A DNA stretch of 64,000 nt, taken from positions 666,638-730,637 of the forward strand of contig NIVC01000197.1 of NCBI GenBank assembly GCA_002269645.1. Direction: 5' to 3'. The DNA comes from Macrostomum lignano. Its lineage: Eukaryota. The first letter of the stretch is position 1. Every line of letters begins with the position of its first letter. This document shows positions 33,304 through 64,000 of this stretch, in pieces. The notes beneath the pieces are model-generated. The model had not been told where the DNA came from, did no database searches, and saw nothing but the letters and a program-made list of their open reading frames with translations. Both the position numbers and the translations under genes were made by a program.

Positions 33304-41712
<8,409 letters not shown>

Positions 41713-41838: not shown

Positions 41839-42971
41839 GGGACAGCTCGAGTGCATGTAGAGAGAGGGCCGCGAAATCATGCAAAATTTCACTTGAAGGC
41901 TGCTTTTCGCTGCAGAAAAACAAAAGTTTTCAGCTTTATCAGCACAAATCATTATCCATACTTCACTTTCCGAACTGCCGCATTGCAAATGAAGCAATTT
42001 AAAGTTTTTTGTCAAGCCTTTCGAAATTTCCTGATTTGCAGCGAGTCCTGCATGTTCGAGACAGCCTACTGACCGGAGAGGCCAGTAGTAGGCTCGTAGG
42101 CGTGGAGTGTTAAAACCAGAATCACGTGACTTCGGCTTAGCTAGTAGAATTAAAGGACACGGATGTACTAAATTTCGATTTCGTATCATCTATAAAATCT
42201 TATTTTCGTCGCAGCTAAAGGCCCAAAGATTTGTGTTTGTCTGGCATGTCACGCCGAAGATGTGTTTTGTGTGCCCCCATATTAAATTGAATTGTAATTT
42301 CTATGAAGTAAGATTCTTTGACTTTGTCAGAAAATCTTTTTGATATAAACAATTGAACTGCATCATTTTTATCATGTTCTAGCTGTAAAAACACTACTAA
42401 TTGTCAGTAGTCTATGCCTATTGTAAAACTGTTATAATTATTCTGTCAACTGCACTGCCCAATCCTCTATTGTTGTTTCAATGTATTACAAAAGCGTTTA
42501 GCCATTCATCCCAACTTCTGTTCCCACATTGTCACTACAAAAATTCTTGATTACTGTATATTATTTCTTCGATTTTGAGATAATAAGTCATTTTCATCGC
42601 ACTATAAATTGCCTACATAAGATTCATTGCATTCATCAACACATTGAAATAAAGATTTTAGTTAAAAAGTTTTCCATTGTTTACATGTTTGAGTAACAGG
42701 CAGCGACATGTTGCATTGAGTGACATGATGCATTGAATCACAGGTATCAATAAAGACTTCCACCAATGATCAACAACACTTCGAGTTAAAGTGCAATAAG
42801 CAAACTGAAGTTGCTAGAAATTTGCACTGGTAAAAACGATGCTAGCCTACTCAACACCAGACATGTTTTTCATGCGGGTGGCACTGCTATAAAAAGTTAT
42901 TTTGAATGAAATATGTGACAAAAAATAGAAAATTATAAAAATACAAAACACAAGTTAAGGGTGGACCCACC

Positions 42972-43425
42972 CTGATCCCACTGCTTACACCAGTGATCCC
43001 ACTGCTCACATCTTTGATCCCACTGCTCACATCTCTGATCCCACTGCTCACATCTCTGATCCCACTGCTTACACCTGTGATCCCACTGCTCACATCTTTG
43101 ATCCCACTGCTCACATCTCTAATCCCACTGCTCACATCTTTGATCCCACTGCTCACATCTGTGATCCCACTGCTCACATCTCTAATCCCACTGCTCACAT
43201 CTTTGATCCCACTGCTCACATCTGTGATCCCACTGCTCACATCTCTAATCCCACTGCTCACATCTGTGATCCCACTGCTCACATCTGTGATCCCACTGCT
43301 CACATCTTTGATCCCACTGCTCACATCTCTGATCCCACTGCTCACATCTCTGATCCCACTGCTCACATCTCTGATCCCACTGCTTACATCTCTGATCCCA
43401 CTGCTCACATCTCTGATCCCACTGC
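42972..43425. repeat. 21-bp minisatellite (tgatcccactgctcacatctc), downstream of the GPCR
   Basis: About 21 units; the same unit as 45856-46475. Confidence 0.96.
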
Positions 43426-43467
43426 TCGGCTCTCCACGCTCCTAAGCTACTGGTAGTTCAAAGGTAA

Positions 43468-45817
43468 TCAGCGACTGAGGCAGCCTCCATCCCCGCCTCC
43501 TTGGCGCAAGTCACCGGTGGCCCCGGCAGTTGCCACCAGTCCTGAGCCGACCAACGGCAGCGAGACGCCGCCAGCGCAGTCCCCGCCGCAGTCGACGCGC
43601 CCAACTCCAATGCCTGCATCGCCTCCAGGAGGTCGGCAGCGGCAGATCAGCCGGCGCAGGTCGTCGCGAAATCTCGCCGACGACGCTGAGTAGACGAAGA
43701 AGTTCATCAGCGAATCGGTGACGGACAGCACGTTGGTGACGATGTCCGGGTGGAACGGCAGCCACTTCAGCAGCTCCGGCCAGAGCCCCAGCGCCGTTGT
43801 GGACACGAAGGTTGGAAACTCGAGCACGCAAAAGACGGCCGCCAGGCTGAGGACCATCCAGCTGGCTCGCTGGGACGCCGCCTGACTTGACAGCCGCCTG
43901 TGCTGACACTTGGCGAGGCTGCGGCGGCTGCGGCGCAGCTGATGCCACATCACCGCGGTGGGCACCGGGATTAGCAGGGTCGGCACCAGAGACTGCGAGT
44001 TTCAGGGATTTATTGGGCTTTAGGCTTTGCCAGCAGCTCACCATTCTCATCATTTTTGGCTTTGTGGCAACTGATGGGATCAGTGATGAGCAGAGATGGG
44101 CAGCGGCGGGATCGGATGCCCAGTGAGGTTGGATCAGAGCTGGGATTTGAGAGTGGTGGGATCAGAGATGAGATTTGAGAGTGGTGGGATCAGAGATGAG
44201 ATTTGAGAGTGGTGGGATCAGAGATGGGATTTGAGAGTTGCGATGGGATCAGAGATGGGATTTGAGAGTTGCGATGGGATCAGAGATGGGATTTGAGAGT
44301 GGTGGGATCAGAGATGGGATTTGAGAGTGGTGGGATCAGAGATGGGATTTGAGAGTGGTGGGATCAGAGATGGGATTTGAGAGTGGTGGGATCAGACATG
44401 GGATTTAAGAGTGGTGGGATCAGACATGGGATTTGAGAGTGGTGGGATCAGACATGGGATTTGAGAGTGGTGGGATCAGACATGGGATTTGAGAGTGGTT
44501 GGAATCAGAGATGGGATTTGAGAGTGGTGGGATCAGAGATGGGATTTGAGAGATGATGGATCAGAGATGGGATTTGAGAGTGATGGGTCAGAGATGGTGG
44601 GGTCAGAGATGGTGAGATCAGAGATGGTGAGATCAGAGATGGTGAGATCAGAGATGGTGGGGTCAGAGATGGTGGGATCAGAGATGGTGAGATCAGAGAT
44701 GGTGGGATCAGAGATGGTAGGATCAGAGATGGTGGGATCAAAGATGGTGGGGTCAGAGATGGTGGAATCAGAGATGGTGGGATCAAAGATGGTGGGATCA
44801 AAGATTGTGGGGTCTGAGATGGTGGAATCAGAGATGGTGGGATCAAAGATGGTGGGGTCAGAGATGGTGGGATCAAAGATGGTGGGGTCAGAGATGGTGG
44901 GATCAAAGATGGTGGAATCAGAGATAGTGGGATCAGAGATGGTGAGATCAGAGATGGTGAGATCAGAGATGGTGAGATCAGAGATGGTGGGATCAAAGAT
45001 GGTGGGATCAGAGATGGTGGGATCAAAGATGGTGGAATCAGAGATAGTGGGATCAGAGATGGTGAGATCAGAGATGGTGGGATCAGAGATGGTGAGATCA
45101 GAGATTGTGGGATCAGAGATGGTGGGAGCAGAGATGGTGGGATCAAAGATGGGATAGGGAAGATTTCACGAGAAGATTCAGAGGATTCGAACTGGAACTC
45201 GCCTGGAAGGCGTACACCGCCCAAGTCAGGGCCTGGTTTCGCAGCAGCGGCCGGGCCACTACGCTGCCTGGCTCCAGGTTGGTGCACAGGACGCCGGCCT
45301 CAGCGAGGTTGGCCGCCGCAGCCAGGCCGATCGCTAGCGCCAGCGCCACGCCGAAGGCGGCGGCCAGGCGGCTCCGGTTGAACAGCAGGCAGCGTCTGAC
45401 AGCCAGCGGCCGGGCAACCGCCTCGCAGCGGGCAGAGCAGATCAGCAGCACCGTCCAGTTGCGGGCCGACACCAGCGCGTTGATGGCAACGTGGACGCAG
45501 CTGGTGATGGCGAAGCTGGCGACGGTGTGCCAGTGCTCGAGGCCGGTGCGCACGATGGCGGCCTCGGCCAGCAGGGCGCACTGCAGGCACACCTCGGTGC
45601 AGGAGATGTACAGCAGCGACAGGCGAACTGCGCGATTGTCGAAGCGCTGTCTGGCGAAGATGTACAGCGCCAGGGAGTTGGCGACCAGTGCAGTCGCGGC
45701 GATGGGCGCTATGACCAGGCAGGTGGCACGCTCAGTGTCCAGGTAGTCATGCTCGTGCTCGTCCAGCGTCCGGTTCAGCTCGGACTGGTTGCAGCGGTCG
45801 CGGAAAAAATACAGCAT
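43468..45817 (-). CDS. Orphan rhodopsin-like (class A) GPCR, 2 coding exons, ~379 aa
   Basis: Exons 45817..45203 and 43992..43468, joined by a GC-AG intron to give AVYAFQ|SLVPTLLI. Seven hydrophobic segments; TM1 ANSLAL, TM3 ARNWTVLLICSARCEAVARP, TM6 AVFCVLEFP, TM7 DSLMNFFVY and helix 8 SARFRDDL. Confidence 0.88.
44140..45152. repeat. 27-bp then 15-bp minisatellites (gagatggtgggatca) in the GPCR intron
   Basis: Directly visible; related by inversion to the flanking 21-bp unit. Confidence 0.95.
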
Positions 45818-45855
45818 GCCGAGCTGATGGGGACGGTGCGTTGAGGACTTCTGCA

Positions 45856-46475
45856 GTGATCCGATCCTACTGCTCACATCTGTGATCCCACTGCTTACAC
45901 CTGTGATCCCACTGCTCACATCTCTGATCCCACTGCTCACATCTCTGATCCCACTGCTCACATCTCTGATCCCACTGCTCACATCTCTGATCCCACTGCT
46001 CACATCTCTGATCCCACTGCTCACATCTCTGATCCCACTGCTCACATCTCTGATCCCACTGTTTACATCTCTGATCCCACTGTTCACATCTCTGATCCCA
46101 CTGCTCACATCTCTGATCCCACTGCTCACATCTCTGATCCCAGTGCTCATATCTCTGATCCCACTGCTCACATCTTTGATCCCACTGCTCATATCTCTGA
46201 TCCCACTGCTCATATCTCTGATCCTACTGCTCACATCTCTGATCCCACTGCTCACATCTCTGATCCCACTGCTCACATCTCTGATCCCACTGCTCACATC
46301 TCTGATCCCACTGCTCACATCTCAGATCCCACTGCTCACATCTCTGATCCCACTGCTCACATCTCTGATCCCACTGCTTACACCTGTGATCCCACTGCTC
46401 AAATCTCTGATCCCACTGCTTACACCTGTGATCCCACTGCTCATATCTCTGATCCCACTGCTTATATCTCTGATC
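45856..46475. repeat. 21-bp minisatellite (tgatcccactgctcacatctc), upstream of the GPCR ATG
   Basis: About 29 units. Confidence 0.96.
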
Positions 46476-47366
46476 CTTATTAATGTTGAGATACGAGCGA
46501 AAAATATCATTTTCCATGCTTTCAATTTAACAGCGCAACAAGCTGCAGTTCAGAAAATTTGTTTGTATTTCCAAATCTCCTTCGATCTCTTTCTACGAGA
46601 TGGAATCAAAAGCTCTAGATAATGACCAGCGAAAACTGGATTGATGAAGAAGCAGCAAGGACTTGTGAATCATTCAGAATTGTTTTGATCTTCTTTCAGA
46701 AAGCTTCACTCTTATCGAATTCATTGTATTCCTGCTTTCAGTGCGTTCAGTTCGAGCTCATATGAGCCGCAATCTCTCTCCTCTCTGTGTCAGCCGTATC
46801 TTTCAGGCACTTACAACTTACAACTACATAAATATGATTGATTGAGCAGTTCTCCTTCCTAATAATTCCTTGTCTATCTCTTATCCTTTGTCGGAAACAC
46901 TTGAAGCCGACTGTGCCACCCGGGCATGCAAAACACGCGCACTTATCACAGCCGTACCTGTACCACTATTGCACTGGCAGCAGATCTGGAAGCGCGGGCT
47001 CTCAGTTCCTGTTGAATTTATGACCCGTTACGCTCCGCGGGGTGGATAAGGGGAAGCGATATAAAACTCCGGGAGAATGGGGAACCAAACAAGGCAAAGC
47101 GCACCGGTGCAGCGGATCAGTAAAAAGATGGGATGCAGCGGCCTAAGTGTGACGCCCCAGCTTAAAGTCCCGGTTTATCGGGCATCAGCAGCGGGTCACG
47201 CCGGTGTCAAGTCATAGAAATGCGCCGCCATTCGGTAGAATAATGAAAACTAAACATTGCCGAAAGCAGACAGCCGACAGATCATAAAAAGTACAACGCC
47301 TACAATAAGCTTGGAACTCTCGCTAGACCTTGCTGGAAACTTTGCTTTTATTTTTTCCTTTTGCTG

Positions 47367-47945: not shown

Positions 47946-48444
47946 GATATGGATATCAGAGAAGTATCAGAGAAACCAAAGAAGAATCAAAGGAAATCAA
48001 TGGCTGAGAAGGAAAAGCAGGGGCAGTGGAGCCTGCAATGCTTTAGATGGCCACCAGTAGAAGGGAAACAAGGCTCGAGGCCAAAAAGGTGAGCCAACAG
48101 CAACGATGCGTCAAGAATACGACTAAAAGAGAGAGGGGGGGCAAACCCTGGATAGCGGATCTGTGAAGGTGAAACTGCAGGTGATGTAGCAGCGATCGGC
48201 GATGGCTAGAAAATCAGAGAAAGAGACAGATGGGGCTCGGGAGTGCGGCAGACACTGGAGTGCGCTCCAGTGGTTCCGCTTTAGTTGCCGGGCAACTTCC
48301 AGCCTATGTGGCTCTTCCAGTTGAAGATTTGAAAAATGCGCTTGACAGAAATGCGGGGCCTGTCAGACAGCGGATTAAGGGTTGAGAGCAGCTGACGTAT
48401 GATGGCGCTGCTGCTGCGGTTTCAGGCCCAGGAAACTGCACTTA

Positions 48445-48972
48445 ACTGACTGACTGACTGACTGACTGACTGACTGACTGACTGACTGACTGACTGACTG
48501 ACTGACTGACTGACTGACTGACTGACTGACTGACTGACTGACTGACTGACTGACTGACTGACTGACTGACTGACTGACTGACTGACTGACTGACTGACTG
48601 ACTGACTGACTGACTGACTGACTGACTGACTGACTGACTGACTGACTGACTGACTGACTGACTGACTGACTGACTGACTGACTGACTGACTGACTGACTG
48701 ACTGACTGACTGACTGACTGACTGACTGACTGACTGACTGACTGACTGACTGACTGACTGACTGACTGACTGACTGACTGACTGACTGACTGACTGACTG
48801 ACTGACTGACTGACTGACTGACTGACTGACTGACTGACTGACTGACTGACTGACTGACTGACTGACTGACTGACTGACTGACTGACTGACTGACTGACTG
48901 ACTGACTGACTGACTGACTGACTGACTGACTGACTGACTGACTGACTGACTGACTGACTGACTGACTGACTG
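48445..48972. repeat. (ACTG)n microsatellite
   Basis: About 130 perfect units. Confidence 0.98.
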
Positions 48973-49272
48973 GATAATATTGTCTCACCTGTTGATTTTA
49001 GCAAAAAGGCGATTGTCTCTTCCTTCTTTGAAAGTTGTGCGCGATTCCAAAGCTATAGATATGTTTGTATGATAAAACAGAGAGTGCCCTTTTATAGACA
49101 CTGTTTACTGTGCGCCAGGGGAGACTTTGTTATACTGCGGAAAACGACCAGTGCGGCACGTATCGTCCTCATTTCGCGGGTAGTCGCTGAGCGATAAAAA
49201 TCCAGCCAATGGGATTCCGGGGCAAAGTTGCAGGGGCATTAAGGCAAGCAAGTCCTAAACTGATTCGGAACG

Positions 49273-49755: not shown

Positions 49756-50276
49756 GTTAATTCATTCCGGTTTTTCTACTATAAGTAGAATATTGGGGTT
49801 AGTTAAGCATTTCTACTGCATTTATTGAAACATCCCACTATCGAAAGCACCATGCAAATGAAGGTCAAGTGCATTTTAAAATAGCCCAGAGGGCAACTGC
49901 TTAATCACTGATGTGTAAAAGCAGGCGTTTTTTCGAAATTTCTAGGCTCAATAAAGGATGCGATAATTAATTATGCTTATTAAAAAGGATTTTGCTTATT
50001 AAAAATTGGGAAAATTCTCAAATGAAGATGTTCTGGAAAAGTAGACAAGGAAGGTATGCAATGAAAAAAAATGAAATTCGCTGCTTCGTTTGCGGGAAGT
50101 GAAATTTTCTTACTGTCGTCAAAAATCTGTATTAGCAAGCGCTGCAATTTGCTATATAAGATTAAAAATTATTTACTAGATGCAACATTGCCCCCGCTGT
50201 GAGCAACTTAATTGCTGATGCACCTACCGAACTGTGCAGTATTTGAGTCTGAAAGTCTGTAGCAGGGGAGACAGTT

Positions 50277-50857
50277 GCCCATTCACTGGAGGCAGTTGCA
50301 CATTCACTGGAGGCAGTTGCACATTCACTGGAGGCAGTTGCACATTCACTGGAGGCAGTTGCAAATTCACTGGAGGCAGTTGCACATTCACTGGAGGCAG
50401 TTGCAAATTCACTGGAGGCAGTTGCAAATTCACTGGAGGCAGTTGCACATTCACTGGAGGCAGTTGCACATTCACTGGAGGCAGTTGCACATTCACTGGA
50501 GGCAGTTGCACATTCACTGGAGACAGTTGCAAATTCACTGGAGGCAGTTGCACATTCACTGGAGGCAGTTGCACATCTACTAGAGGCAGTTGCAAATTCA
50601 CTAGAGGCAGTTGCTCATTCACTGGAGGCAGTTGCACATTCACTGGAGGTAGTTGCACAACTACTAGAGGCAGTTGCAAATTCACTAGAGGCAGTTGCAC
50701 ATTCACTGGAGGCAGTTGCACATTCACTGGAGGCAGTTGCACATTCACTGGAGGCAGTTGCACATTCACTGGAGGCAGTTGCACATTCACTGGAGGCAGT
50801 TGCACATTCACTGGAGGCAGTTGCACATTCACTGGAGGCAGTTGCACATTCACTGAA
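50277..50857. repeat. 21-bp minisatellite (cacattcactggaggcagttg)
   Basis: About 27 units. Confidence 0.96.
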
Positions 50858-51825
50858 GCAAGGAAGGTAACCGAGCATTAACTAACTTACTCGAGTCTCA
50901 AGGACAATTACCAAGGTAATGTTAGAAATTGATCAATTTTATCTATACGTATACAAACTCTCGTATGCAAGGTCGATTCAAGATTAAAATTTTATGACCC
51001 TGGAATCTTTCACGCCGGTGCAGATCTCAGGAGGAGATAAAATGTCAACCCGGAAGCGATAAGTTCACTTATCAAAATGAATAGACATTGCATAACTGAT
51101 TGAAGACGGTCTGAGGAAGTAAGTTCGACCTTTGTTCAACCGCAGTTTGCTGTATATCCTTCACCTAATCTCCTAAAGTGTGCACCAACTAATCTAATTG
51201 ACTGTCTTATTGTCCTGTTTTTCGCTTATATATCTGTTTTCATGAGCTGACCAAGCTCAACCTTCAACTTTGAACTCTTGGGACGACAGCGAAAAAAACA
51301 AAAAAGCATCACGCAACCGGGCAAAACACTTTCAACAGAAACAGGTCTTTCATTCAGTACCGCCTGTGATCAGTAGGGTAGACAGTACGGCTGTCTCCGA
51401 GCAGAAAATTCAATCAGCATCTATAAAAATGGCTGCTTCATCGGACAGATTAATTTTAGCAAACACTCGCTGCCTTTCATTCCGTGTTCTATTCAATTTT
51501 GCCACTTTATCGATGCGTCTCGCAGAATCCTTGGGGATTTAGCAGATGATTTTTGCTTGTTCCAATCGCCTTGGAAATCTGAATGCGCAGTTCGCAACAG
51601 GTTTGCGTGCAATTCGGGCAGGTGCACTAGTTCGACTGGTTGTGTCATGTGACCTGAACTATAGCGATTCGTACGGTTGGAATATTGAGTTACACTACCC
51701 TGTCATGTCGCTTTTTATGTTGAAAGTTTCAAGCAAATCTTTGATCTGGGCAGGGGTAAGAGTTGCTTCTCTGTGAATAGTTGCGTAGACGTCCACAAGG
51801 ATCTGCAGCCCAAGCAAGTGAGTGT

Positions 51826-52524
51826 GGACAATGTGGGCAGTTGGTTAGTTATCCGTCATGGACAGTGTGGGCAGTTGGTTAGTTATCCGTCATGGACAGT
51901 GTGGGTAGTTGGTTAGTTATCCGTCATGGACAGTGTGGGCAGTTGGTTAGTTATCCGTCATGGACAGTGTGGGTAGTTGGTTAGTTATCCGTCATGGACA
52001 GTGTGGGTAGTTGGTTAGTTATCCGTCATGGACAGTGTGGGTAGTTGGTTAGTTATCCGTCATGGACAGTGTGGGCAGTTGGTTAGTTATCTGTCATGGA
52101 CAATGTGGGCAGTTGGTTAGTTATCCGTCATGGACAGTGTGGGCAGTTGGTTAGTTATCCGTCATGGACAGTGTGGGTAGTTGGTTAGTTATCCGTCATG
52201 GACAGTGTGGGTAGTTGGTTAGTTATCCGTCATGGACAGTGTGGGCAGTTGGTTAGTTATCCGTCATGGACAGTGTGGGTAGTTGGTTAGTTATCCGTCA
52301 TGGACAGTGTGGGCAGTTGGTTAGTTATCTGTCATGGACAGTGTGGGCAGTCGGTTAGTTATCCGTCAAGGACAGTGTGGGCAGTTGGTTAGTTATCCGT
52401 CATGGACAGTGTGGGCAGTCGGTTAGTTATCCGTCAAGGACAGTGTGGGCAGTTGGTTAGTTATCCGTCAAGGACAGTGTGGGCAGTTGGTTAGTTATCC
52501 GTCATGGACAGTGTGGGCAGTTGG
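51826..52524. repeat. 34-bp minisatellite (gacagtgtgggcagttggttagttatccgtcatg)
   Basis: About 20 units. Confidence 0.96.
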
Positions 52525-53027
52525 TTGTCCATCGAGAAGCACTGCTGGACTAAGACTTTTTTCGTTGTTGCGGCGTACGAGAGGCAAGTTTCCATTCTCT
52601 GTGATAAAAAAGGATTCTACACGTCAGTTTTTCGGACTGAAGAAATCATTTTTCAACACTCAGGACCCGAAAAGCCAGAAAAAATATGAGCAGGTGCGGC
52701 CAAATCCAGCCTTCAGTCAGTCATCCGCTTCCAAACTCGGTTTGTTCCGGTTCGGAGAGCCGGAAAAAATCAAAATTCGAAAAATCCAATCAGATGAAAC
52801 TCGCAAGGTCTCCGATTTTGACTTCTAAAGATAAGGATTTGCTGCCCATCGCAGAATCGAATCACGCAGAAAACTCTCCAAACTGGGCTCCGTCGTCACT
52901 GGGCCATTTCCTCTTTCTCACGGGATTGTTTGTCACCATGAGCAAACTCGAGGGGGGAGATTAAACTGATTGGACGGTCAACTCCCACCTGGCCAGTTTT
53001 TCTCTCGGGTGCTCTCTCGATCGCGCT

Positions 53028-53035
53028 TATAAATA
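53028..53035 (+). promoter_or_regulatory. Probable TATA box of peptide precursor 1
   Basis: TATAAATA lies ~30 nt before a likely non-coding first exon ending GAG|GTAAGC at 53100; the acceptor CGCAG ends at 53295. Confidence 0.6.
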
Positions 53036-53328
53036 GAAGAGCAGCGGAGATGGGCTGATCGGATCATTTTTGGTTCGGACGAAATCAATCGACGCTGGAG
53101 GTAAGCGTTGCTCATTTTTAAGCTTTGGAGACAGATTCAAGGCAAGCTTGCTAGGCCAAGAATTTAGTTCTCTAAGTATTCCTTCTTGCCACGGTACTGG
53201 GAGTTGTCCGTGCCAAAACTCATTGCAGGATTTCTAAAACGTTTTAGACCTAAATGCACGGGGCGATTAATTTTCTTCCTTGATCCTTATCGCAGATTTC
53301 AAGCCACTTTTCAACGCGACGACAAAAA

Positions 53329-53733
53329 ATGCAGTCGCACATTTTCATCAGCCTGTGCCTTGGCCTGGCCGCGGCAACCGTCGCCGTGTCGGGTGCCTCC
53401 ATCGGCAACTACGAGATGTCGAAGCGGCAGACGGACGCCTGGAGCGGCCACAAGCTCGAGGTGCCGATCAAGTGGCGCAAGCGTGGCCCAGAGCTCATCA
53501 TTGACCGGCTAGACAAACGCGGCCCCGAGATGCTGCTCCAGCGCCACTTGTCTGGCAAGCGATTCCACAAGCGCGGCCCGGAGCTCATCATCGACCGGCT
53601 AGACAAGCGCGGCCCGGAGCTCATCATTGACCGGCTGGACAAACGTGGCCCCGAGATGCTGCTCCAGCGTCACTTGTCTGGCAAGCGATTCCACAAGCGC
53701 GGCCCAGAGCTCATCATCGACCGGCTGGACTGA
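53329..53733 (+). CDS. Secreted multi-copy (neuro)peptide precursor, 134 aa
   Basis: Signal peptide MQSHIFISLCLGLAAATVAVSG. KR/RKR-flanked peptides: QTDAWSGHKLEVPIKW, GPELIIDRLD x4, GPEMLLQRHLSG x2 (amidation Gly) and FH x2. GC3-rich codons, with only synonymous differences between repeats. Confidence 0.9.
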   Translation: MQSHIFISLCLGLAAATVAVSGASIGNYEMSKRQTDAWSGHKLEVPIKWRKRGPELIIDRLDKRGPEMLLQRHLSGKRFHKRGPELIIDRLDKRGPELIIDRLDKRGPEMLLQRHLSGKRFHKRGPELIIDRLD

Positions 53734-53826
53734 GCCAAAGCTGAGGCGCAGTGCTCACTATGACTTCGATGCTGGACACTGGTTTTTCCCTGCTTGTTTC
53801 ATCGTCTGGATCAGCTGGCAATTTAA

Positions 53827-53832
53827 AATAAA
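53827..53832 (+). terminator. Candidate polyadenylation signal (AATAAA) of precursor 1
   Basis: AATAAA ~95 nt after the stop codon. Confidence 0.45.
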
Positions 53833-56800
53833 TATACCCTTTAGCTTAAGGCATCGTGCTTGCACTTCTGATATACCATCTTGAGTGGCTGATAGCAAAA
53901 GCTAGACTGGTTCAGTAACAATTCACAAACATTAACGTGTGCCCATGAGCTATGCAACTTTTACTTAAAGAAGTCAGCAAACAAGCCACATATTCAAACA
54001 CTGCGAGTAGTGTATTTCTGGTGGTTACTCTGCGGTCAGTGTTACTGATTTTGTAAGGGGAGGGTCTGTAAAACTACAAAAAATATCGGCGGCTAAGGCT
54101 TTTAGTCACGGATAGCTCTGTCGGCCATCCGTTAAAAATTTACTTTTAACTTCATACGATAGAAAAACCTTCCGTAAAAGTGATTTTGTCACTGGACGAG
54201 TGACATTCAATGCAAACCTCGATGGGCCACTCAATACATTTGCATGCATGCTATTTTCAGTTCAGTAGTAAGTTAAACTGAACCATTTAAATGTATTTTT
54301 AAGACAAGACTCATTTATTTACTCTTACCCCCCTTAAACCCTCAAACTCCACACTGAACCTCTGCTTCAGTCTAAATCTGCCATGTACATTTTAGTGGCT
54401 AATGTACATTATGTCTAAATCTGCCATGTACATTTTAGTGGCTAATGTACATTATGGCTGAACCAATACCAATTAGCAAGCTGTTTACGCCTGCAAGCTT
54501 GGCTTCTAAACTTATCAGTCATTTCAGCTGCTATTCTTGTATGTATTATGTATTATGTATTGTGATAAATAGGCAATTAGATAATAGCATGCACGGTAAG
54601 CAATTAATTAGGCCCTAGACAAACCTACTTGGAGCGTTTGGAGATTTTAAAGCTATTAATCCTAATCGCCTATCGCCGGTCGGCGAGTTCTACCAGTCTT
54701 TCTCCAATAGCCGCAGGTACAGTACAAGAAAATAAAGAACACGAGAGAACACAAACCGAAAGATTTAGAGAGTGATAATCCTATATGATACAACTGATAA
54801 TTGGCTAGACGATTTAATTTGATTATTCAGGCTACAGGATTCAAGCAATTCGCGGCGCAGATAATTAGACTGATGATAACGAATAATAACGATTAATAAT
54901 AATGATTATATTACGCACTGACAAGCGGATCTCAGCTTGAAGAAGAAGAAGGAGGCACCGAACACAGGACCACGGAGAAAGACTCCTAACCCCTGGCCTA
55001 AGCCAGAACCTACTCTCAAACGAGAGCCCTGCCGAATCGACCGTTCAACGGAGTACCGACTGAATTCTATCGGCACTGCCCTTCAGTGTAACACTGAGGC
55101 CCTCGGGGTCGAGGCCGCGTACTTGATCAGATCCGACAGTCTCTATCTAACCGCGCTTGATAGCGACGACGTCAGACAAGGATGCCGAATCGTTACGCTA
55201 TAAGACTGAAGCGGTTGGGCGGGGAACAAAAACACGGACCGGGGGTGATGAATTCAGGCGCCTCAAAGCGCGAACCAACAAGAGAGGAGAAATCGGGCCA
55301 CCGGCCGGGAAGCTGGACAAGACAAAACCGGGGAAAGAGAGGCGAGAAGTGAGATCCGATTGCCAAATACACTTTCATATATAGTCAGAGTCACAAGCCC
55401 TCAAAACCCCCCTCAAGCCGGGTGGTGGTCGTCTGGCCGGCCGCTTGCTTAAGCCGAATTGCACCGTGCCCGCGGCGCCGGGTAGAATTGAAACTTGCCG
55501 CGTGCCAGGGTCCAGGCCGGTTCTGATTGGCTGGCCGCGCAAAGCTGGGGTTCGCAGACAAACTCAATCCTCCGCTGAGTCACAAATTTGGCGTCTAACT
55601 CTAACCTGTTTACACAAAATTGATTCTAACTAACAAGGAAAAAGTACACCAAAAACGTATGACTAAACTAAAGCAAAATAACAATTCAATAACAATATAG
55701 AAACGAATGCAGTCAATTTACAACAAAATACACGCAAAGATGCTCACACTACAGTATTCTTCTTTGCTACTGAACTGAAAGTAGAAAGCTGTTTTGCTAA
55801 TTATATATGCCTGAGTGGCCCATCTAGTTTTTCTAGTATCCGTGCACAAACCCGAGAAGTTATAAATGCCTCGAGAAAGTTTTCTAAAAATCTGCGAGGT
55901 CAGTTGGCATCGGATTAACAACGTCCGCCTGGAAGTCGGACTGGGAGACATTCGAATATTGAGCTAAGCATAGGCTAAGATGTAACAGAAACAGCTGGAA
56001 CGAGAAGGAATTGCATGTTATTTTAAAGAATAACTTAAGTCTTATTCAACTCCTAATCGCAAGATACTCAGGTCAGTTTTTACCGACTCACTGTGTGTCA
56101 AGATTGCCTGGCCAGGGTATGCTACTATACTCCCATTGACTGCAGCGGGTTGTTTTTGTTTCTGTACGCGTATCTTTCTTGCCACCAAACGCTTGGCTAG
56201 CTAAGTTGGGGCTCAGGAGCCCACAAATATATGGTAAAACTGGACGGCCGGCCTCCAGTCTTGGACACGTCTCATTCGTCTGTGCCACCTCGGGAGCCAC
56301 TTCCCATGGAAAATACTCGTAGCTACTCGAACACTTGCAATCTGACTTCGTCATCAGAAAGATCATCAGGGACCTCTTGCTTACTGCAACCGGTACCAGC
56401 TCTGCATTTCCTAAGGGAGTTTTTCAAGCGTAAAAAGCTTTGAGGTTACTTGCAGTAGTCACTTGCTAAAAGATACAAGCTATACTGTTGACTTTGCAGA
56501 GAAAATGTTTCCGCTTTTGCGCTTCTATTCGCTTAAAAATAATTTCATTTAAAGCAAGTCGTTTCGGAATTGAAGGGCTGGGAGATGTGCAAAAATAGTG
56601 AAGCAGAGGGTGCTTGTCCTCGTGCTCAATGGGGGCGGAGGCAGTTTTAGAGCAGTTTCCCTACTGCAACAGGCGATTGGCCCGGGAAGTGAAGGAGAGA
56701 AGGTCTACCATCCCCCAGTGCGACTTCTCCGAGGAATAAATTTCTCCAAAACGGGGCGCTGCGTGGGAGTCGCTGCTGTTGCTGTTTCTATCGCTGACAC

Positions 56801-57169
56801 TGCCGCGCGAGTTGCTCATCCGCCCTGCCTCTTTCTGCTAGCTGCAGCGAGTTCGAAGTATTGGGTAAGCTGCGACGCTTGATGAAAGTGGGGGGGGGGG
56901 GCGGGGAAGTCAGCGGCTGGTGCTTTCTAGATGAGCTGCAATTTCCAGAAAAGTTCTGACCCGGATGCAGCTCTGCACTATTGAACTTTGGACAGTTAAT
57001 CCGAAAAATTGCTTTACTGCTGTTTTAAGGCTAGAAAAGAGCTGGCTTGCAAAAATAACCTGCAAAAACATGGCAGTGTGAAACAAGCTGATTTATGCTT
57101 TGATTGACCTCGCATGACCTCACATAAATAAAAAGCGACGAAAAATTAGCCCCATATATCAAAACGTTT

Positions 57170-57558
57170 TTTGAGTATGCGCATCCGTGATCCCAAGAAG
57201 CAGTTTAGAATGTGCATCCGTGATCCCAAGATGCAGTTTAGAATGTGCATCCGTGATCCCAAGATGCAGTTTAGAATGTGCATCCGTGATCCCAAGATGC
57301 AGTTTAGAATGCGCATCCGTGATCCCAAGAAGCAGTTTCGAATATGCATCCGTGATCCCAAGATGCAGTTTAGAATGTGCATCCGTGATCCCAAGAAGCA
57401 GTTTAGAATGCGCATCCGTGATCCCAAGATGCAGTTTAGAATGCGCATCCGTGACCCCAGATGCAGTTTAGAATGCGCATCCGTGATCCCAAGATGCAGT
57501 TTAGAATGCGCATCCGTGATCCCAAGAAGCAGTTTAGAATGTGCATCCGTGATCCTAA
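57170..57558. repeat. 33-bp minisatellite (gcatccgtgatcccaagatgcagtttagaatgt)
   Basis: About 12 units, just upstream of the acceptor for precursor 2. Confidence 0.95.
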
Positions 57559-57610
57559 ATGTATGATCTTAAATTTCCTCTTATCCATTGCCTCAGCAGG
57601 CAAAAGGAAA

Positions 57611-57901
57611 ATGTCAGCTTGGCTCCCAGTTCTCTTGGGCCTAGTGCTCCTTGTCACTGTGTCAGCTGCTCCGGCCGCCAACGCCGACAAGCTTCAGGCT
57701 GCCTCGGGCCATCGGATGAAGCGGCAGACGGACGCGTGGAACGGGCACATCATCGATCTTGGCCGCAAACGTCGCCGCTGGACCAGCAGCGAAGCCGTCG
57801 TCGAATCGCCGCGTTGGCGTCGCGTCCCCTCGCGCTTGGGACCGCGCCGCGGATGGCTGCACGACAACGACGGCGACCTCTTGGTTATGGAAGACTATTG
57901 A
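57611..57901 (+). CDS. Secreted peptide precursor 2, 96 aa, paralog of precursor 1
   Basis: Signal peptide MSAWLPVLLGLVLLVTVSA; KR-QTDAWNGHIIDLG-RKRRR, predicting pQTDAWNGHIIDL-amide. Acceptor CTCAG ends at 57596; candidate donor of a non-coding exon at 56864 (GTAAGC). Confidence 0.82.
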   Translation: MSAWLPVLLGLVLLVTVSAAPAANADKLQAASGHRMKRQTDAWNGHIIDLGRKRRRWTSSEAVVESPRWRRVPSRLGPRRGWLHDNDGDLLVMEDY

Positions 57902-60094: not shown

Positions 60095-62777
60095 ATGAAC
60101 AGTCTGGAGTACCGCCTTGCCGCTCTGGCTGACAAGGAGCAGGTGTCCGTGTGCCACGGGGACGATCCCGGCACCATCTACAATGGCCTGGACTATGTGC
60201 CGCAGAGGTACCGCATGGCCCTGTCCAGCAGTAACAAAATCTGCGGCCTCTGCTTTGACAGGCAAGCTGGTAGAGTGGTGAGTGGAACTCGCCGATCAAA
60301 AGAGTCAACCAACATTTGCTGAATGTTTCACAACAAACTGACTACGAGCCGTATTCGTACCAGGGTTGCGGGCATCCTGGTCAAACGTCCACAGTGTCCA
60401 TCGTCTCAAAATCAGAGCTGAGGCAGTTTTGGCCATTCCCCTGACTCCTGAGTGCATGTGCTTCGAGTGCGCAGATAGTGTACACAGACACAAACTCATT
60501 CACACGTTCGCACAGCGTGTACAATGGCCTGACGACCTCTGGTTCGACTCCGTGTGTGGCCGAATTCATTTCCGGGCTTGTGCACGACAGTAGGCCGGCG
60601 GTTGTCGTTCGATCCGCACCCATGAGGGCCAGCCTCCAAGGCACAGAGACTGTACATGCCTGACGATTAGAAAATCGGGGCCGCTGTGCACCCTGTGTGA
60701 GCGTGTGTGCGAGTGCGTGCCTGTGTACAGTACGCTCGTATTAACGCGCTTGTATGCGTGCTCAGGAGTCACACGGACGGGCAGAATTGCCTCAGCGCTT
60801 TCAGTTCAGAGTGCCCGCAGCTTGCCTGCGAGTGTTTATTTTTCTAATCAATCAGTCAGTCAGTCAGTCAGTCAGTCCATTCTTCACAAGTTCAGGTGGC
60901 CTACGGTCAAATCTTCGTATTCGACGGCGGGCGCCACATGCTGCTGACAGGCCTGCGGGTGCATCCGCTCTACCAGGGCCGCGGAATCGCCACCGAGCTT
61001 CGCAACTTTCTCTGCCGCGAGACGCGCAAGAAATTTCCGGAAGTGAGCCCGGAAGTTCGATTCGGCGTCTACAAGCCGCAGTTCAGCAGCGCGGAGTTCT
61101 TCGCTCAGAACTTGGACTACACCCTGATCTCGAAGAGGGTGAGAAATTTTATTGAGGCGGCAAAATATCCCCTATTTCTAACTCTTATAAGCATAACTGG
61201 GGCATTTTGTTATTTCTCTTTTCAGCACTATTACGTGGTAAGCCGCACGGAAGTTAAAGTTGTTTCAATATTTTGATTGGAGTCAAGGGAGACGCAGAGA
61301 GACATGGTGAGACACTGTGAGACACTGTGAGACACTGTGAGACACGTTGAGACACTGTGAGACATTGTGAGACACTGTGAGACATGGTGAGACACTCTGA
61401 GACACTGTGATACATGGTGAGACATTGTGAGACACTGTGAGACACTGTGAAACACTGTGAGACACTGAGACACTGTGAGACACTGTGATACATGGTGAGA
61501 AACTGTGAGACACTGTGAGACACTGTGAGACACTGAGACACTGTGAGACACTGTGAGACGCTGAGACACTGTGAGACACTGTGATACATGGTGAGACACG
61601 GTGAGACACGGTGAGACACTGTGAGACATGGTGAGACACTCTGAGACACTGTGAAACACTATGAGACACTTACAGTCTCACAATAGTCAACTTCACAATG
61701 CCTCCCTCGCTAGACGGAGTTTCCCCTGTCCCAGCTGTCGCAGCTCCGTGACGCAATCTCCAGAGCCCGCAGCGCATCCGAGCTGCGCCATGCTCAGGAG
61801 GTCGTGTGGACCACCCGCAGCCGCCTGTACACCGCGATGCTGAAGGACTCGGCATTTCAGCAACTGTATAGTGGCTCCGTTATCTCCATCAACTTTGAGC
61901 TACTTGAACTGGACGAGTCTAACCTTGCTGTGCTGCCGGGAGACAGCGGAAGCGGCCCCGAAGGCGATGACAACGCTCCGAACAGCGTCATGGTCGCCAC
62001 GAACGACGGGCAGCTGGTGCTGGGGTACGGAAGCACTTTGTACTGCCGGAAGGGCCTGCGCGCGGACTTTGACTTGTACTGCAATGGACTGGATAGGGGT
62101 GAGACCGGCCTGGATTGGTTGAATTGTGACCGGATTGAGATGTGATGATGGATGTACTTACTCACTGGCCTGGGACATTGGGGCGCCAACCGACAGGAGC
62201 GGCCCACAAAGAGATAGGGGCGCCTACCAAAAGACAGGGGGGCCAACCAAGTGACAGGGGCGCCCACCAACTGACAGGGGCGCCAACCAAGAGACAAGGG
62301 CGCCAACCAAGTGACAGGGGCGCCAACCAAGAGACAAGGGCGCCAACCAAGAGACAGAGGCACCCACCAAGAGGCCAAATATTTGCACCCATTGAGGTTG
62401 CAGCCCGTCCAATTAAAGTTCCCGCACTGTTTTTCAGTCCCTACATATAATTGCGAATTCTTTGCGAATTTTCAGCGGACTTCTCATCCGAGACCCTAGC
62501 TGGTCTGTGCTCAAGCCTGGTGATCGGCTTCCTGTCTCAGCTTCTAGCCACCGATGGTGAGCAACTGGCCGCAATTCCTGAGCAATCGTTGTCGTTGTTC
62601 GTTTCGCTCGACTGTTTCAGCGGCACCAGTTTGAGTCCGTGCTCAAACTGCGATTTGGAGTCGCGATTGTCTGCCAGTCTCCAAAGCCTCATCAGCGAGG
62701 AGCTGATGCTCAGGCATCCGTTCTATTCCGAGGGCTGCCCCTACGCTCTGCTGAAGAGGAGAGTGCGATTGGATTGA
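60095..62777 (+). CDS. GNAT acetyltransferase, NAT16/histidine N-acetyltransferase-like, 5 exons, ~367 aa
   Basis: Exons 60095..60277, 60896..61138, 61226..61237, 61735..62098, 62476..62777 join in frame. IYNGLDYVPQRY; acetyl-CoA motif A GLRVHPLYQGRGIA; the C-terminal half ('ELLELDESNLAVL') resembles the NAT16-type extension. Confidence 0.82.
60416..60796. mobile_element. Two SINE family-2 copies in opposite orientation inside intron 1 of the GNAT gene
   Basis: Plus copy ~60535-60800 (B box CTGGTTCGACTCC, body gccgctgtgcaccctg); minus copy ~60416-60529. Confidence 0.7.
61287..61668. repeat. 10-bp minisatellite (gagacactgt)
   Basis: Fills GNAT intron 3. Confidence 0.95.
62180..62370. repeat. 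~20-bp minisatellite (gggcgccaaccaagagacag)
   Basis: About nine units in GNAT intron 4. Confidence 0.88.
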
Positions 62778-62892
62778 TGAGAGGAGGGTATCATGCACCT
62801 GATTGCACTGCTAATTGCACCGGATGCTTGCCTATGAGCTTACTGTGCTCAATGTACTGTCAAATAAAGTTAATAAATAACCTTTCATATGC

Positions 62893-63853
62893 GATGAGGC
62901 ACAAAAAGACACGGTCAGGCACAGAAAGACACGATGAGGCACAGGGAGACACGATGAGGCACATGGAGACACGGTGAGGCACATGGAGACACGGTGAGGC
63001 ACATGGCACATGGAGACACGGTGAGGCACAGAAATACGTGGTGAGGCACAGGGAGACACTGAGAGGCACATGGAGACACGGTGAGGCACATGGAGACACG
63101 GTGAGGCACAGGGAGACACGGTGAGGCACAGGGAGACACGGTGAGGCACAGGGAGACACCGTGAGGCACAGTGAGACACGGTGAGGCACATGGAGACACG
63201 GTGAGGCACAGGGAGACACGGTGAGGCACAGGGAGACACCGTGAGGCACAGGAGACACCGTGAGGCACATGGAGACACCGTGAGGCACAGGGAGACACTG
63301 AGAGGCACAGGGAGACACGGTGAGGCACAGGGAGACACGGTGAGGCACAGAGAGACACGGTGAGGCACAGGGAGACACTGAGAGGCACATGGAGACACCG
63401 TGAGGCACAGGAGACACGGTGAGGCACAGGGAGACACGGTGAGGCACAGGAGACACCGTGAGGCACATGGAGACACCGTGAGGCACAGGGAGACACGGTG
63501 AGGCACAGGGAGACACCGTGAGGCACAGGAGACACCGTGAGGCACATGGAGACACCGTGAGGCACAGGGAGACACTGAGAGGCACAGGGAGACACGGTGA
63601 GGCACAGGGAGACACGGTGAGGCACAGAGAGACACGGTGAGGCACAGGGAGACACTGAGAGGCACATGGAGACACCGTGAGGCACAGGAGACACGGTGAG
63701 GCACAGGGAGACACGGTGAGGCACAGGGAGACACGGTGAGGCACAGGGAGACACGGTGAGGCACAGGGAGACATGGTGAGGCACAGGGAGACACGGTGAG
63801 GCACAGGGAGACATGGTGAGGCACAGGGAGACACGGTGAGGCACAGGGAGACA
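62893..63853. repeat. 20-bp minisatellite (gtgaggcacagggagacacg)
   Basis: About 48 units. Confidence 0.96.
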
Positions 63854-64000
63854 GATTCTCTGGCATATTTGAAGTCTTAATGTGGCCCCTTAATTATCTT
63901 ACAGAATAGAATGTACGTATTCACCACAGGTAACTAATTTTAATTGTAAGATAAACGCTTGAGTTAAAAAATAAAAGTACACAATTGAACCGTTTTAAGT

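What the first reader, a model, noticed from the sequence alone, without database searches (positions are those of the whole stretch)
53329..57901. Tandem pair of paralogous secreted peptide precursors defining an unrecognised pyroGlu-QTDAW[S/N]GH peptide family
Seen: two signal-peptide ORFs ~3.9 kb apart on the same strand share KR-QTDAW[S/N]GH after the first dibasic site (27/30 nt identical: aagcggcagacggacgcctggagcggccac vs aagcggcagacggacgcgtggaacgggcac), while the rest diverges. Both appear to have a non-coding first exon with the ATG just after the acceptor. Established: N-terminal Gln after KR forms pyroglutamate, and G-K/R signals amidation. This predicts pQTDAWSGHKLEVPIKW (free acid) and pQTDAWNGHIIDL-NH2. 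Inference: I cannot assign the motif to GnRH/AKH/corazonin, NPY/F, FMRFamide, pedal peptide or the flatworm spp-type families I know, so it may be an undescribed signalling-peptide family. It could alternatively be a gland or seminal secretion.
Basis: partly seen in the sequence, partly recalled or inferred. Interest (0 to 1): 0.8.

Follow-up and report, generated by a model that had tools for sequence, protein, structure and literature searches.

The report
Paired flatworm secreted-peptide precursor genes
Two neighbouring genes of the flatworm Macrostomum lignano encode small secreted precursors that share one ten-residue block (KR-QTDAW[S/N]GH) and are built like neuropeptide or peptide-hormone precursors with no detectable relatives; this is a real but modest addition to the flatworm peptide catalogue, and it still lacks expression-site and peptide evidence.

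Summary
Two same-strand ORFs 3.9 kb apart (53329-53733 and 57611-57901) have hydrophobic signal peptides. After their first dibasic site they share KRQTDAW[S/N]GH (27/30 nt), and nothing else in them aligns. The window is the end of contig NIVC01000197.1 of Macrostomum lignano (assembly Mlig_3_7). Both genes are annotated there from transcript evidence as "hypothetical protein". A partial CDS on a third copy of the locus reads through the exon 1-exon 2 junction of gene 1, which confirms its non-coding first exon.

All six nucleotide differences between its repeat copies are synonymous. Gene 2 predicts pQTDAWNGHIIDL-NH2.

I found no homologue in 5.8 billion or 1.84 billion proteins, in Pfam, in the planarian and schistosome prohormone tables, or in full-text literature. 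Resemblances to eye53, npp-8 and GnRH-like peptides are weak and fail their defining features.

The best reading is a lineage-restricted pair of orphan prohormone genes (about 0.6). The "family" so far is two paralogues in one species. Cell type, mature peptides and orthologues remain untested. Interest is modest.

The parts
53028..53036 (+). TATA box (TATAAATAG) of gene 1
   Evidence: Sequence read. The annotated transcript-derived CDS of the third copy starts about 23 nt downstream, equivalent to window position ~53059.
53059..53100 (+). Gene 1 exon 1, non-coding (5' end approximate)
   Evidence: GenBank partial protein PAA74283.1 (P0006) begins SDHFWFGRNQSTLE|ISSHFSTRRQKMQSH. This is the in-frame translation of exon 1 joined to exon 2.
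53101..53295 (+). Gene 1 intron (195 nt, GT...AG, polypyrimidine tract before the AG)
   Evidence: the junction is confirmed by P0006.
53329..53733 (+). Gene 1 CDS, 134 aa in this assembly (BOX15_Mlig017097 group). The annotated product is 92 aa, one 126-nt repeat unit fewer.
   Evidence: GC3 is 0.86 and ORF GC 0.64, against 0.40-0.48 in the flanks. The 126-nt gap cannot have GT-AG or GC-AG ends.
53329..53394 (+). Gene 1 signal peptide MQSHIFISLCLGLAAATVAVSG (predicted cleavage VSG|AS)
   Evidence: Hydrophobicity and (-3,-1) heuristic.
53422..53451 (+). Shared block KRQTDAWSGH (copy 1)
53428..53475 (+). Predicted peptide pQTDAWSGHKLEVPIKW (free acid, [M+H]+ 1877.954), followed by RKR
   Evidence: Processing is inferred from standard prohormone rules.
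53485..53730 (+). Multi-copy region: 4x GPELIIDRLD, 2x GPEMLLQRHLSG (giving -S-NH2) and 2x FH, all separated by KR. It is built from a 126-bp tandem duplication.
   Evidence: TRF finds period 126, 2.0 copies, 94% match. The 6 variable nucleotides among the copies are all synonymous third positions.
53827..53832 (+). Gene 1 polyadenylation signal AATAAA, 94 nt after the stop
57177..57555 (+). 33-bp x 11.5 minisatellite immediately upstream of gene 2 (putative intron or outron). It creates the spurious upstream extension of ORF 2.
   Evidence: Its length varies between genomic copies.
57595..57596 (+). Gene 2 splice acceptor AG (tandem CAG|CAG), 14 nt before the ATG. Whether it is cis- or trans-spliced is undetermined.
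57611..57901 (+). Gene 2 CDS, 96 aa (BOX15_Mlig028894 group)
   Evidence: Exact product on record in GCA_002269645.1. GC3 is 0.73.
57611..57667 (+). Gene 2 signal peptide MSAWLPVLLGLVLLVTVSA (predicted cleavage VSA|AP)
57719..57748 (+). Shared block KRQTDAWNGH (copy 2), preceded by R at -4 (RMKR, a furin-type site)
57725..57763 (+). Predicted peptide pQTDAWNGHIIDL-NH2 ([M+H]+ 1364.659). The Gly donor is followed by RKRRR.
57779..57898 (+). Gene 2 C-terminal part: WTSSEAVVESPRW / VPSRLGP / GWLHDNDGDLLVMEDY, separated by RR
   Evidence: The only amino-acid difference between genomic copies (S59N) lies here.

Best explanation
These are two tandemly duplicated, independently annotated genes of Macrostomum lignano (Mlig017097 and Mlig028894 groups). 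Each encodes a small preproprotein of the prohormone type. The following steps are inferred from standard prohormone processing. After the signal peptide is removed, prohormone convertases cut at KR/RKR/RR sites and a carboxypeptidase trims the basic residues. C-terminal Gly is converted to an amide and N-terminal Gln cyclises to pyroglutamate. Gene 1 would yield pQTDAWSGHKLEVPIKW plus four copies of GPELIIDRLD and two of GPEMLLQRHLS-NH2. Gene 2 would yield pQTDAWNGHIIDL-NH2 plus two or three C-terminal peptides. The only block retained by both paralogues is the cleavage site plus the first eight residues of the peptide. This suggests that the N-terminus of a processed peptide is what selection preserves. 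The products most likely act as intercellular signals (neuropeptides or peptide hormones) on unidentified receptors. The genes are lineage-restricted orphans. Shown here: gene structure, transcript-based annotation, coding constraint, shared block, absence of detectable homologues. Inferred: processing, secretion route, cell type, signalling role.
For: The shared block is far beyond chance. A six-frame scan of the 64 kb for ORFs with an N-terminal hydrophobic core and at least 2 dibasic sites returns only these two plus one unrelated ORF at 40622 that I did not examine further. The contig belongs to GCA_002269645.1 / NIVC. That annotation was built only from RNA evidence: StringTie/TACO, BLAT-mapped de novo transcripts and TransDecoder (PMC5730564). 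Both CDSs are called on three contigs. PAA74283.1 reads through the exon 1-exon 2 junction, which is evidence for a spliced mRNA. Coding signature: GC3 of 0.86 and 0.73, and ORF GC of 0.64 against 0.40-0.48 in the flanks. All 6 nucleotide differences among the internal peptide copies are synonymous, which I roughly estimate at about 2e-4 by chance assuming about a quarter of random changes are synonymous (the estimate is mine, not computed). Architecture: short peptides flanked by KR, repeated copies and G-KR/G-RKR amidation signals. This is the same layout as the mass-spectrometry-validated planarian prohormones (Collins 2010 Table S5). M. lignano has a PC2 homologue expressed in the nervous system and essential in RNAi (PMC4490696).
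Against: There are no data on where the genes are expressed and no peptide detection. No orthologue was found anywhere, so conservation of the motif is untested. The signal peptides were judged only by heuristics. Gene 1's QTDAW peptide is not amidated and the two peptides differ after residue 8. GPELIIDRLD is acidic and unamidated, which also fits non-neuronal secretory products. The gene IDs were not found in any of the supplementary tables searched: germline/neoblast (PMC5816591), positional/orthologue (PMC7336406) and aneuploidy differential expression (PMC12896417). That neither supports nor excludes neuronal expression.
Confidence: 0.6

Rival explanations
1. The genes encode secreted peptides of non-neuronal gland cells (prostate/seminal fluid, adhesive, pharyngeal or epidermal glands). 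Their products would act outside the body or in the mating partner rather than as internal signals.
For: Signal peptide plus dibasic processing is not specific to neurons. RMKR in gene 2 is a furin-type site usable in the constitutive pathway. The genes are lineage-restricted with no detectable homologues, as is typical of reproductive and gland products. The main product GPELIIDRLD is acidic and unamidated.
Against: Multi-copy short peptides with precise KR spacers and Gly-KR amidation signals are the hallmark of the regulated secretory pathway. The IDs are absent from the tables of the Macrostomum reproduction-related RNA-seq study that I could search (weak, because files may be incomplete).
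Confidence: 0.2
2. The shared KRQTDAW[S/N]GH block is a conserved pro-region element (a processing or sorting signal). It is not itself a bioactive peptide. The bioactive products would be the divergent downstream peptides.
For: Only 8 residues after the cut are conserved and the remainder of the two 'QTDAW peptides' differs in length, charge and C-terminal chemistry. Gene 1 invests most of its coding length in other repeated peptides that show no amino-acid change between copies.
Against: The signal peptides and the spacers before the KR are not conserved at all. In families with a conserved pro-region, from my own knowledge of cone-snail toxin precursors, the whole signal and pro part is usually conserved. 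The conserved block starts exactly at a cleavage site with Gln at P1', which fits a mature peptide N-terminus.
Confidence: 0.1
3. They are highly derived members of an already named family: GnRH/AKH/corazonin-type, planarian eye53, or npp-8.
For: pQTDAWNGHIIDL-NH2 is a 12-mer with pGlu and an amide, like GnRH-superfamily peptides. Q-[ST]-x-x-aromatic-S is shared with Smed-grh-1, pQSYHFSNDWLP-NH2. DAW is shared with eye53-2, A[LV]VPDAWDDWEI. D.AW.SG[YH] resembles npp-8, DQAWYSGY-NH2.
Against: Each family's defining features fail (see the membership test). The peptide is not directly behind the signal peptide. It lacks the HFSN.W core, the PxxWDDWE core and a C-terminal SGY-amide. None of the tripeptides AWS, AWN, WSG, WNG, SGH or NGH occurs in the planarian or schistosome tables. 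A profile of the motif gives npp-8 and eye53-2 negative scores. One or two tripeptide coincidences are expected when screening about 50 precursors.
Confidence: 0.07
4. The ORFs are not functional protein-coding genes. They would be chance ORFs in GC-rich repeats or non-coding transcripts.
For: The window is full of minisatellites that create long spurious ORFs. The annotated product of gene 1 disagrees with the genomic ORF by one repeat unit.
Against: Differences between repeat copies are synonymous only. GC3 is strongly elevated. Signal peptide, dibasic sites and amidation signals occur in one frame in both genes. The shared block is in frame in both genes. There are transcript-derived CDS calls and a spliced 5' exon.
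Confidence: 0.03

Closest known systems
Orphan 'spp/npp' prohormone genes of planarians (Collins et al. 2010, PMC2953531)
   Same: Small (<150 aa) preproproteins with a signal peptide and short peptides bounded by KR/RR, often in several copies. They carry Gly-KR amidation signals and some pGlu N-termini, and many have no homologues outside flatworms.
   Different: No sequence relationship was detected. The planarian genes have mass-spectrometry and in situ evidence, and these two have none.
Smed-eye53-2 / eye53-1 peptides (A[LV]VPDAWDDWEI; LSVPTYFDDWES)
   Same: KR-flanked, non-amidated, Trp-containing acidic peptides of about 12 residues. The tripeptide DAW sits near the N-terminus and an acidic-aliphatic pair at the end.
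   Different: The eye53 core P-x-[YA]-[WF]-D-[DE]-[WI]-[ED] is absent here. eye53 has 2-3 copies per precursor, whereas the QTDAW block occurs once per precursor. The motif profile gives eye53-2 a negative score.
Smed-npp-8 (…DQAWYSGY-NH2, three copies)
   Same: D-x-A-W-(x)-S-G-aromatic/His string.
   Different: In npp-8 the motif is the amidated C-terminus of each peptide. Here it is the N-terminus after KR-Q and is not followed by Gly-KR. A one-residue gap is needed to align them, and the profile score is negative.
Lophotrochozoan GnRH-like peptides (Smed-grh-1, pQSYHFSNDWLP-NH2)
   Same: pGlu N-terminus. Gene 2's peptide is a 12-mer amidated through G-RKR. It has an aromatic residue at position 5 followed by Ser or Asn.
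   Different: GnRH-type peptides lie directly after the signal peptide, but here a 9-17-residue spacer and a KR precede the peptide. The H-F-S-N-x-W core is absent. Gene 1's peptide is 16 residues and unamidated.
Multi-copy non-amidated precursors such as orcokinin / pedal-peptide type (from my own knowledge, not tested)
   Same: Gene 1's GPELIIDRLD is a repeated, acidic, unamidated, KR-flanked peptide. 'IIDR' recalls orcokinin 'EIDR'.
   Different: It lacks the N-terminal x-F-D and the C-terminal G-F/G-L hallmarks and is shorter. No sequence test was run against that family.

Membership tests
Generic neuropeptide / peptide-hormone precursor (prohormone architecture) | N-terminal signal peptide | tested here: met
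   Hydrophobic core score of 2.6 and 3.05, and (-3,-1) sites VSG|A and VSA|A. This is a heuristic only; SignalP was not available.
Generic neuropeptide / peptide-hormone precursor (prohormone architecture) | Short peptides delimited by dibasic sites, often in repeated copies, with Gly-basic amidation signals | tested here: met
   There are 10 dibasic sites in gene 1 and 7 in gene 2. Products are 4x GPELIIDRLD, 2x GPEMLLQRHLSG-KR and IIDLG-RKRRR.
Generic neuropeptide / peptide-hormone precursor (prohormone architecture) | Expressed as mRNA | tested here: met
   Indirect evidence. The CDSs come from an annotation built from RNA evidence only, and PAA74283.1 spans a splice junction. No read counts were seen.
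Generic neuropeptide / peptide-hormone precursor (prohormone architecture) | Expression in neurons or endocrine cells with the processing enzymes; mature peptides detectable | not testable with these tools
   This needs in situ hybridisation or scRNA-seq, and LC-MS/MS.
GnRH / AKH / corazonin superfamily | Bioactive peptide starts immediately after the signal peptide with pGlu | tested here: not met
   Spacers ASIGNYEMS-KR and APAANADKLQAASGHRM-KR precede the Gln. In Smed-grh-1 the Gln follows the signal peptide directly.
GnRH / AKH / corazonin superfamily | C-terminal amidation via G-K/R-R after 8-12 residues | tested here: inconclusive
   Met by gene 2 (12-mer, G-RKR). Not met by gene 1 (16-mer ending W-RKR).
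GnRH / AKH / corazonin superfamily | Conserved core (lophotrochozoan pQ-x-Y-H-F-S-N-x-W) | tested here: not met
   Only Q1, S/T2, aromatic 5 and S6 (gene 1 only) coincide with Smed-grh-1.
Planarian eye53 family | Two or three copies of P-x-[YA]-[WF]-D-[DE]-[WI]-[ED] peptides | tested here: not met
   Only DAW is shared, there is one copy per precursor, and the profile score is -8.3 bits.
Flatworm npp-8 | Repeated peptides ending [AV]-W-[HY]-S-G-Y-amide | tested here: not met
   The motif here is N-terminal, is not followed by Gly-KR, and needs a gap to align. The profile score is -0.6 bits.
Other flatworm npp families (McVeigh 2009; Koziol 2016 catalogues) | Sequence match to a catalogued M. 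lignano or cestode npp precursor | not tested
   McVeigh 2009 is not held in the library under either identifier tried. I did not look up Koziol 2016 by identifier; it appeared in none of the keyword searches. Full-text search for the peptide strings found 0 papers.

The most novel reading that the evidence does not exclude
The QTDAW peptides are the ligands of a Macrostomorpha-specific (or more widely distributed but unrecognised) pGlu-peptide signalling system. One possibility is a strongly derived offshoot of the GnRH/corazonin-type lineage that has moved behind a propeptide. The cognate receptor might be the divergent peptide-type class-A GPCR encoded 7-10 kb upstream in the same window, which would make this a ligand-receptor gene neighbourhood.
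Probability: 0.07. Interest if true: 0.6.

Novelty: new member of a known kind. Interest (0 to 1): 0.3.

Why it matters
Macrostomum lignano is a transgenic flatworm model for regeneration, ageing and sexual selection. In the literature I could search, no neuropeptide catalogue for this species turned up. Two well-defined candidate prohormone genes, with gene IDs, exact gene structure, predicted peptides and masses, can be tested directly by in situ hybridisation, RNAi, peptidomics and receptor deorphanisation. If orthologues with a conserved QTDAW core exist in other macrostomids, this would add one more lineage-restricted peptide family. It would also give a clean example of paralogues that retain only the N-terminal part of a peptide. 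It would not change current views of peptide signalling, because orphan prohormones are found in every flatworm that has been examined closely.

Tried and rejected
1. Whole-protein searches with both precursors in 5.8 billion proteins returned only the proteins themselves.
2. HMMER with gene 1 against 1.84 billion representatives gave self plus three unrelated repeat proteins at E of about 1e-5. These align to the KR-spaced repeat through compositional similarity and are not homologues.
A 45-column profile with randomised flanks detected motif-only targets in my local test. In the database run it gave '7 candidates, none E<=10'. Even the two source proteins failed to score, so the positive control failed and this search says nothing about further members.
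4. Pfam gave only noise below the cut-offs.
5. A degenerate DNA pattern and a protein-guided scan of JGI metagenomes found nothing, as expected for an animal gene.
6. Gene conversion was tested as the cause of the 27/30 nt identity. Six of 8 degenerate codons are identical against 4.5 expected from local codon usage (P = 0.22), so no special mechanism is needed. The shared rare codons CGG and ACG leave it open.
7. The other genomic copies (L001, L003) were examined for evolutionary signal. They are 98-100% identical, with 0 substitutions in gene 1 and 2 synonymous plus 1 non-synonymous in gene 2, which is too few for dN/dS.
8. The 126-nt 'intron' implied by the 92-aa annotated product was tested. 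No GT-AG or GC-AG placement exists, so I reject it as an intron.
9. A search for further motif copies in the window and in L001 found none.
10. Literature: the peptide strings and gene IDs occur in no paper's main text. The IDs are absent from the supplementary tables of three Macrostomum papers. A first search for 'QTDAW' returned only MathType artefacts.
11. A polycistronic reading, with gene 2 trans-spliced from gene 1's transcript, was considered. The two genes carry different transcriptional-unit numbers in the annotation and gene 1 has its own AATAAA, so it is unlikely but not excluded.

Full report

Yes. The two 30-nt strings lie at 53422-53451 and 57719-57748 on the + strand and differ at three positions, so 27/30 are identical. 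None of 100 dinucleotide-preserving shuffles of the window gave a match. BLASTN of the two loci (2.6 kb against 3 kb) extends the match to 29/32 nt (E = 3e-7) and finds nothing else alignable. BLASTP aligns only KRQTDAWSGHKLEV with KRQTDAWNGHIIDL.

ORF 1 is 53329-53733 (134 aa). ORF 2 as listed mechanically starts at 57461, inside a 33-bp minisatellite. The biologically sensible and annotated start is 57611 (MSAWLP..., 96 aa). A six-frame scan of all 64 kb looked for ATG-ORFs with an N-terminal hydrophobic core and at least two dibasic sites. It returned only these two ORFs plus one unrelated 60-aa ORF at 40622 that I did not examine further.

**2. Where the window comes from**

The exact 96-aa product and a 92-aa version of ORF 1 are on record in NCBI assembly GCA_002269645.1, on contigs NIVC01000197.1 and NIVC01003721.1. 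The window is the last 64 kb of NIVC01000197.1, as the coordinates show. NIVC is the annotated Mlig_3_7 genome of the free-living flatworm Macrostomum lignano (PMC5730564; taxonomy).

A third copy lies on NIVC01000959.1. Its proteins are PAA74283.1 (BOX15_Mlig017097g3) and PAA74284.1 (BOX15_Mlig028894g3), both named 'hypothetical protein'. The three genomic copies are collinear and 98-100% identical outside minisatellites. Against the third copy, gene 1 has no substitution. Gene 2 has two synonymous changes and one S59N change outside the QTDAW peptide. These copies are haplotypes or very recent duplicates of a neopolyploid genome and carry no usable evolutionary signal.

**3. Are they real genes?**

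The Mlig_3_7 annotation was derived only from RNA evidence: StringTie/TACO on RNA-seq, BLAT-mapped de novo transcripts and TransDecoder. The CDS calls therefore imply transcripts.

PAA74283.1 is a 5'-partial product. Its first 25 residues (SDHFWFGRNQSTLE|ISSHFSTRRQK) are the in-frame translation of window positions ~53059-53100 joined to 53296 onward. It also places the transcript start about 23 nt downstream of a canonical TATAAATAG (53028-53036). An AATAAA follows 94 nt after the stop.

For gene 2 I see a strong acceptor (polypyrimidine tract, CAG|CAG at 57595-57599) 14 nt before the ATG, but no convincing first exon. With 39% of M. lignano genes trans-spliced, a spliced-leader acceptor is equally possible.

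Both ORFs stand out compositionally. Their GC is 0.64 against 0.40-0.48 in the flanks, and GC3 is 0.86 and 0.73.

The strongest internal evidence for coding constraint is in gene 1. The four GPELIIDRLD copies and the two GPEMLLQRHLSGKRFH copies differ at six nucleotide positions, and all six are synonymous third positions. Assuming about a quarter of random changes are synonymous, I estimate this at roughly 2e-4 by chance; that figure is my own rough estimate, not a computed result.

The annotated 92-aa product lacks one 126-nt repeat unit relative to all three genomic copies. No placement of that gap has GT-AG or GC-AG ends. It is therefore a copy-number mismatch between transcript evidence and genome (a collapsed repeat or a polymorphism), not an intron.

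**4. Anatomy of the two precursors**

| Part | Gene 1 | Gene 2 |
|---|---|---|
| Signal peptide | MQSHIFISLCLGLAAATVAVSG | MSAWLPVLLGLVLLVTVSA |
| Spacer | ASIGNYEMS | APAANADKLQAASGHRM |
| First cleavage site | KR | KR (RMKR, furin-type) |
| QTDAW peptide | QTDAWSGHKLEVPIKW, then RKR | QTDAWNGHIIDLG, then RKRRR |
| Remainder | [GPELIIDRLD-KR-GPEMLLQRHLSG-KR-FH-KR-GPELIIDRLD-KR] x2, the second unit ending at the stop after ...DRLD | WTSSEAVVESPRW-RR-VPSRLGP-RR-GWLHDNDGDLLVMEDY |

Standard processing predicts these products:

| Gene | Predicted peptide | Copies | [M+H]+ |
|---|---|---|---|
| 1 | pQTDAWSGHKLEVPIKW | 1 | 1877.954 |
| 1 | GPELIIDRLD | 4 | 1140.626 |
| 1 | GPEMLLQRHLS-NH2 | 2 | 1279.694 |
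| 1 | FH (dipeptide) | 2 | 303.145 |
| 2 | pQTDAWNGHIIDL-NH2 | 1 | 1364.659 |

By eye, the C-terminal HIIDL of gene 2's peptide resembles LIIDRL of gene 1's repeat. I did not test this.

**5. Paralogy and the nucleotide identity**

Several features make tandem duplication the simplest account, at least for the shared block. The genes have the same orientation, are adjacent, and each has a single coding exon with an acceptor just upstream of the ATG. The identical block also sits at the same relative position (residue 32 against 37).

The near-identity at DNA level does not require gene conversion. With codon usage estimated from 587 local codons, 4.5 of the 8 degenerate codons are expected to be identical, and 6 are observed (P = 0.22). 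The shared rare codons CGG and ACG leave a recent exchange possible.

**6. Comparison with what is known**

- **Pfam:** nothing above noise.
- **5.8-billion-protein search with each precursor:** self only.
- **HMMER against 1.84 billion representatives with gene 1:** self plus three unrelated repeat proteins.
- **Sharpened motif profile:** the run was uninformative because even the source proteins failed to score.
- **Metagenome scans:** empty.
- **Full-text search:** the peptide strings and gene IDs occur in no paper.
- **Reference flatworm prohormone set (Collins et al. 2010, Tables S5 and following; planarian and schistosome precursors):** none of AWS, AWN, WSG, WNG, SGH, NGH, IDR, RGPE, QRH or RHL occurs.

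Three weak resemblances emerged:

- eye53-2, KR-A[LV]VPDAWDDWEI-KR.
- npp-8...DQAWYSGY-NH2.
- The GnRH-like grh-1, pQSYHFSNDWLP-NH2, directly behind its signal peptide.

Each fails that family's defining features (see the membership test). The motif profile gives eye53-2 and npp-8 negative scores. McVeigh 2009 is not held in the library, and Koziol 2016 did not surface in any search and was not looked up by identifier. 'Not previously named' is therefore likely but not proven.

**7. Most likely mechanism**

Signal-peptide cleavage would be followed by prohormone-convertase cleavage at KR/RKR/RR. A nervous-system PC2 homologue exists in M. lignano and is essential (PMC4490696). Carboxypeptidase trimming, amidation of Gly-extended peptides and pyroglutamate formation would then follow, with release as intercellular signals.

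What both paralogues kept is the cleavage site plus the first eight residues. This is what one expects if the N-terminus of a mature peptide is recognised by a receptor. These steps are inferred, not shown. I put about 0.6 on a neuropeptide or peptide-hormone role. About 0.2 goes to a non-neuronal gland secretion and about 0.1 to the block being a pro-region element. Less than 0.1 goes to membership of a named family, and about 0.03 to a non-functional ORF.

**8. Verdict**

These are good orphan prohormone candidates, but the 'family' is two paralogues in one species. Orphan, fast-evolving prohormones are routine in flatworms; Collins et al. list many. I therefore rate this a new member of a known kind, with interest of about 0.3.

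Noticed in passing
window 43468-43986 (-) and 45143-45817 (-): There is a divergent class-A (rhodopsin-type) GPCR gene 7-10 kb upstream of gene 1 on the opposite strand. The C-terminal exon matches Pfam 7TM_GPCR_Srw above its gathering score (28.5 against 22.2 bits), matches 7tm_1 weakly, and its best PDB relative is galanin receptor 2 (E = 0.025). The N-terminal exon has NxS/T sites and a TM3-like xRCxxVxxP motif by eye, but no Pfam hit. An intron with a minisatellite separates the exons. Adjacency to the peptide genes may be coincidence.
   Followed up: partly
L003 (NIVC01000959.1) 5382-6056 and 10001-10291; L001 (NIVC01003721.1): The whole locus is present on three contigs of the same assembly at 98-100% identity. 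L001 carries a 1-bp homopolymer deletion in gene 1 (GGCCCC to GG-CCC) that breaks the frame and is probably a sequencing error. L003 gene 2 has S59N.
   Followed up: yes
window 53478-53730: The GenBank product of gene 1 (92 aa) is one 126-nt repeat unit shorter than the genomic ORF (134 aa) on all three contigs. The implied gap has no possible canonical splice ends, so it reflects a repeat collapse or copy-number polymorphism in the transcript evidence.
   Followed up: yes
window 57177-57555: A 33-bp x 11.5 minisatellite lies directly upstream of gene 2. It is open in frame with the gene, which creates a false 146-aa ORF. Its length differs between the genomic copies (131 indel columns against L003).
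   Followed up: partly
window, throughout (e.g. 2135-3150, 6750-7740, 34355-35630, 42887-43445, 44505-46620, 48375-49004, 50224-50881, 51825-52526, 61231-63866): There is an extreme density of minisatellite arrays. They generate most of the long ORFs in all frames. None of ten non-repeat ORFs tested had a Pfam hit.
   Followed up: partly
L003 17333-20291 (+), beyond the end of the window's contig: A Fasciclin-domain (PF02469) gene of more than 828 aa lies about 7 kb downstream of gene 2 on the third copy.
   Followed up: no
window 57743-57760 vs 53494-53514 (and repeats): The C-terminal HIIDL of gene 2's QTDAW peptide resembles LIIDRL of gene 1's repeated peptide. This hints that gene 1's repeat unit and the tail of the ancestral QTDAW peptide may be related. 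It was seen by eye only.
   Followed up: no
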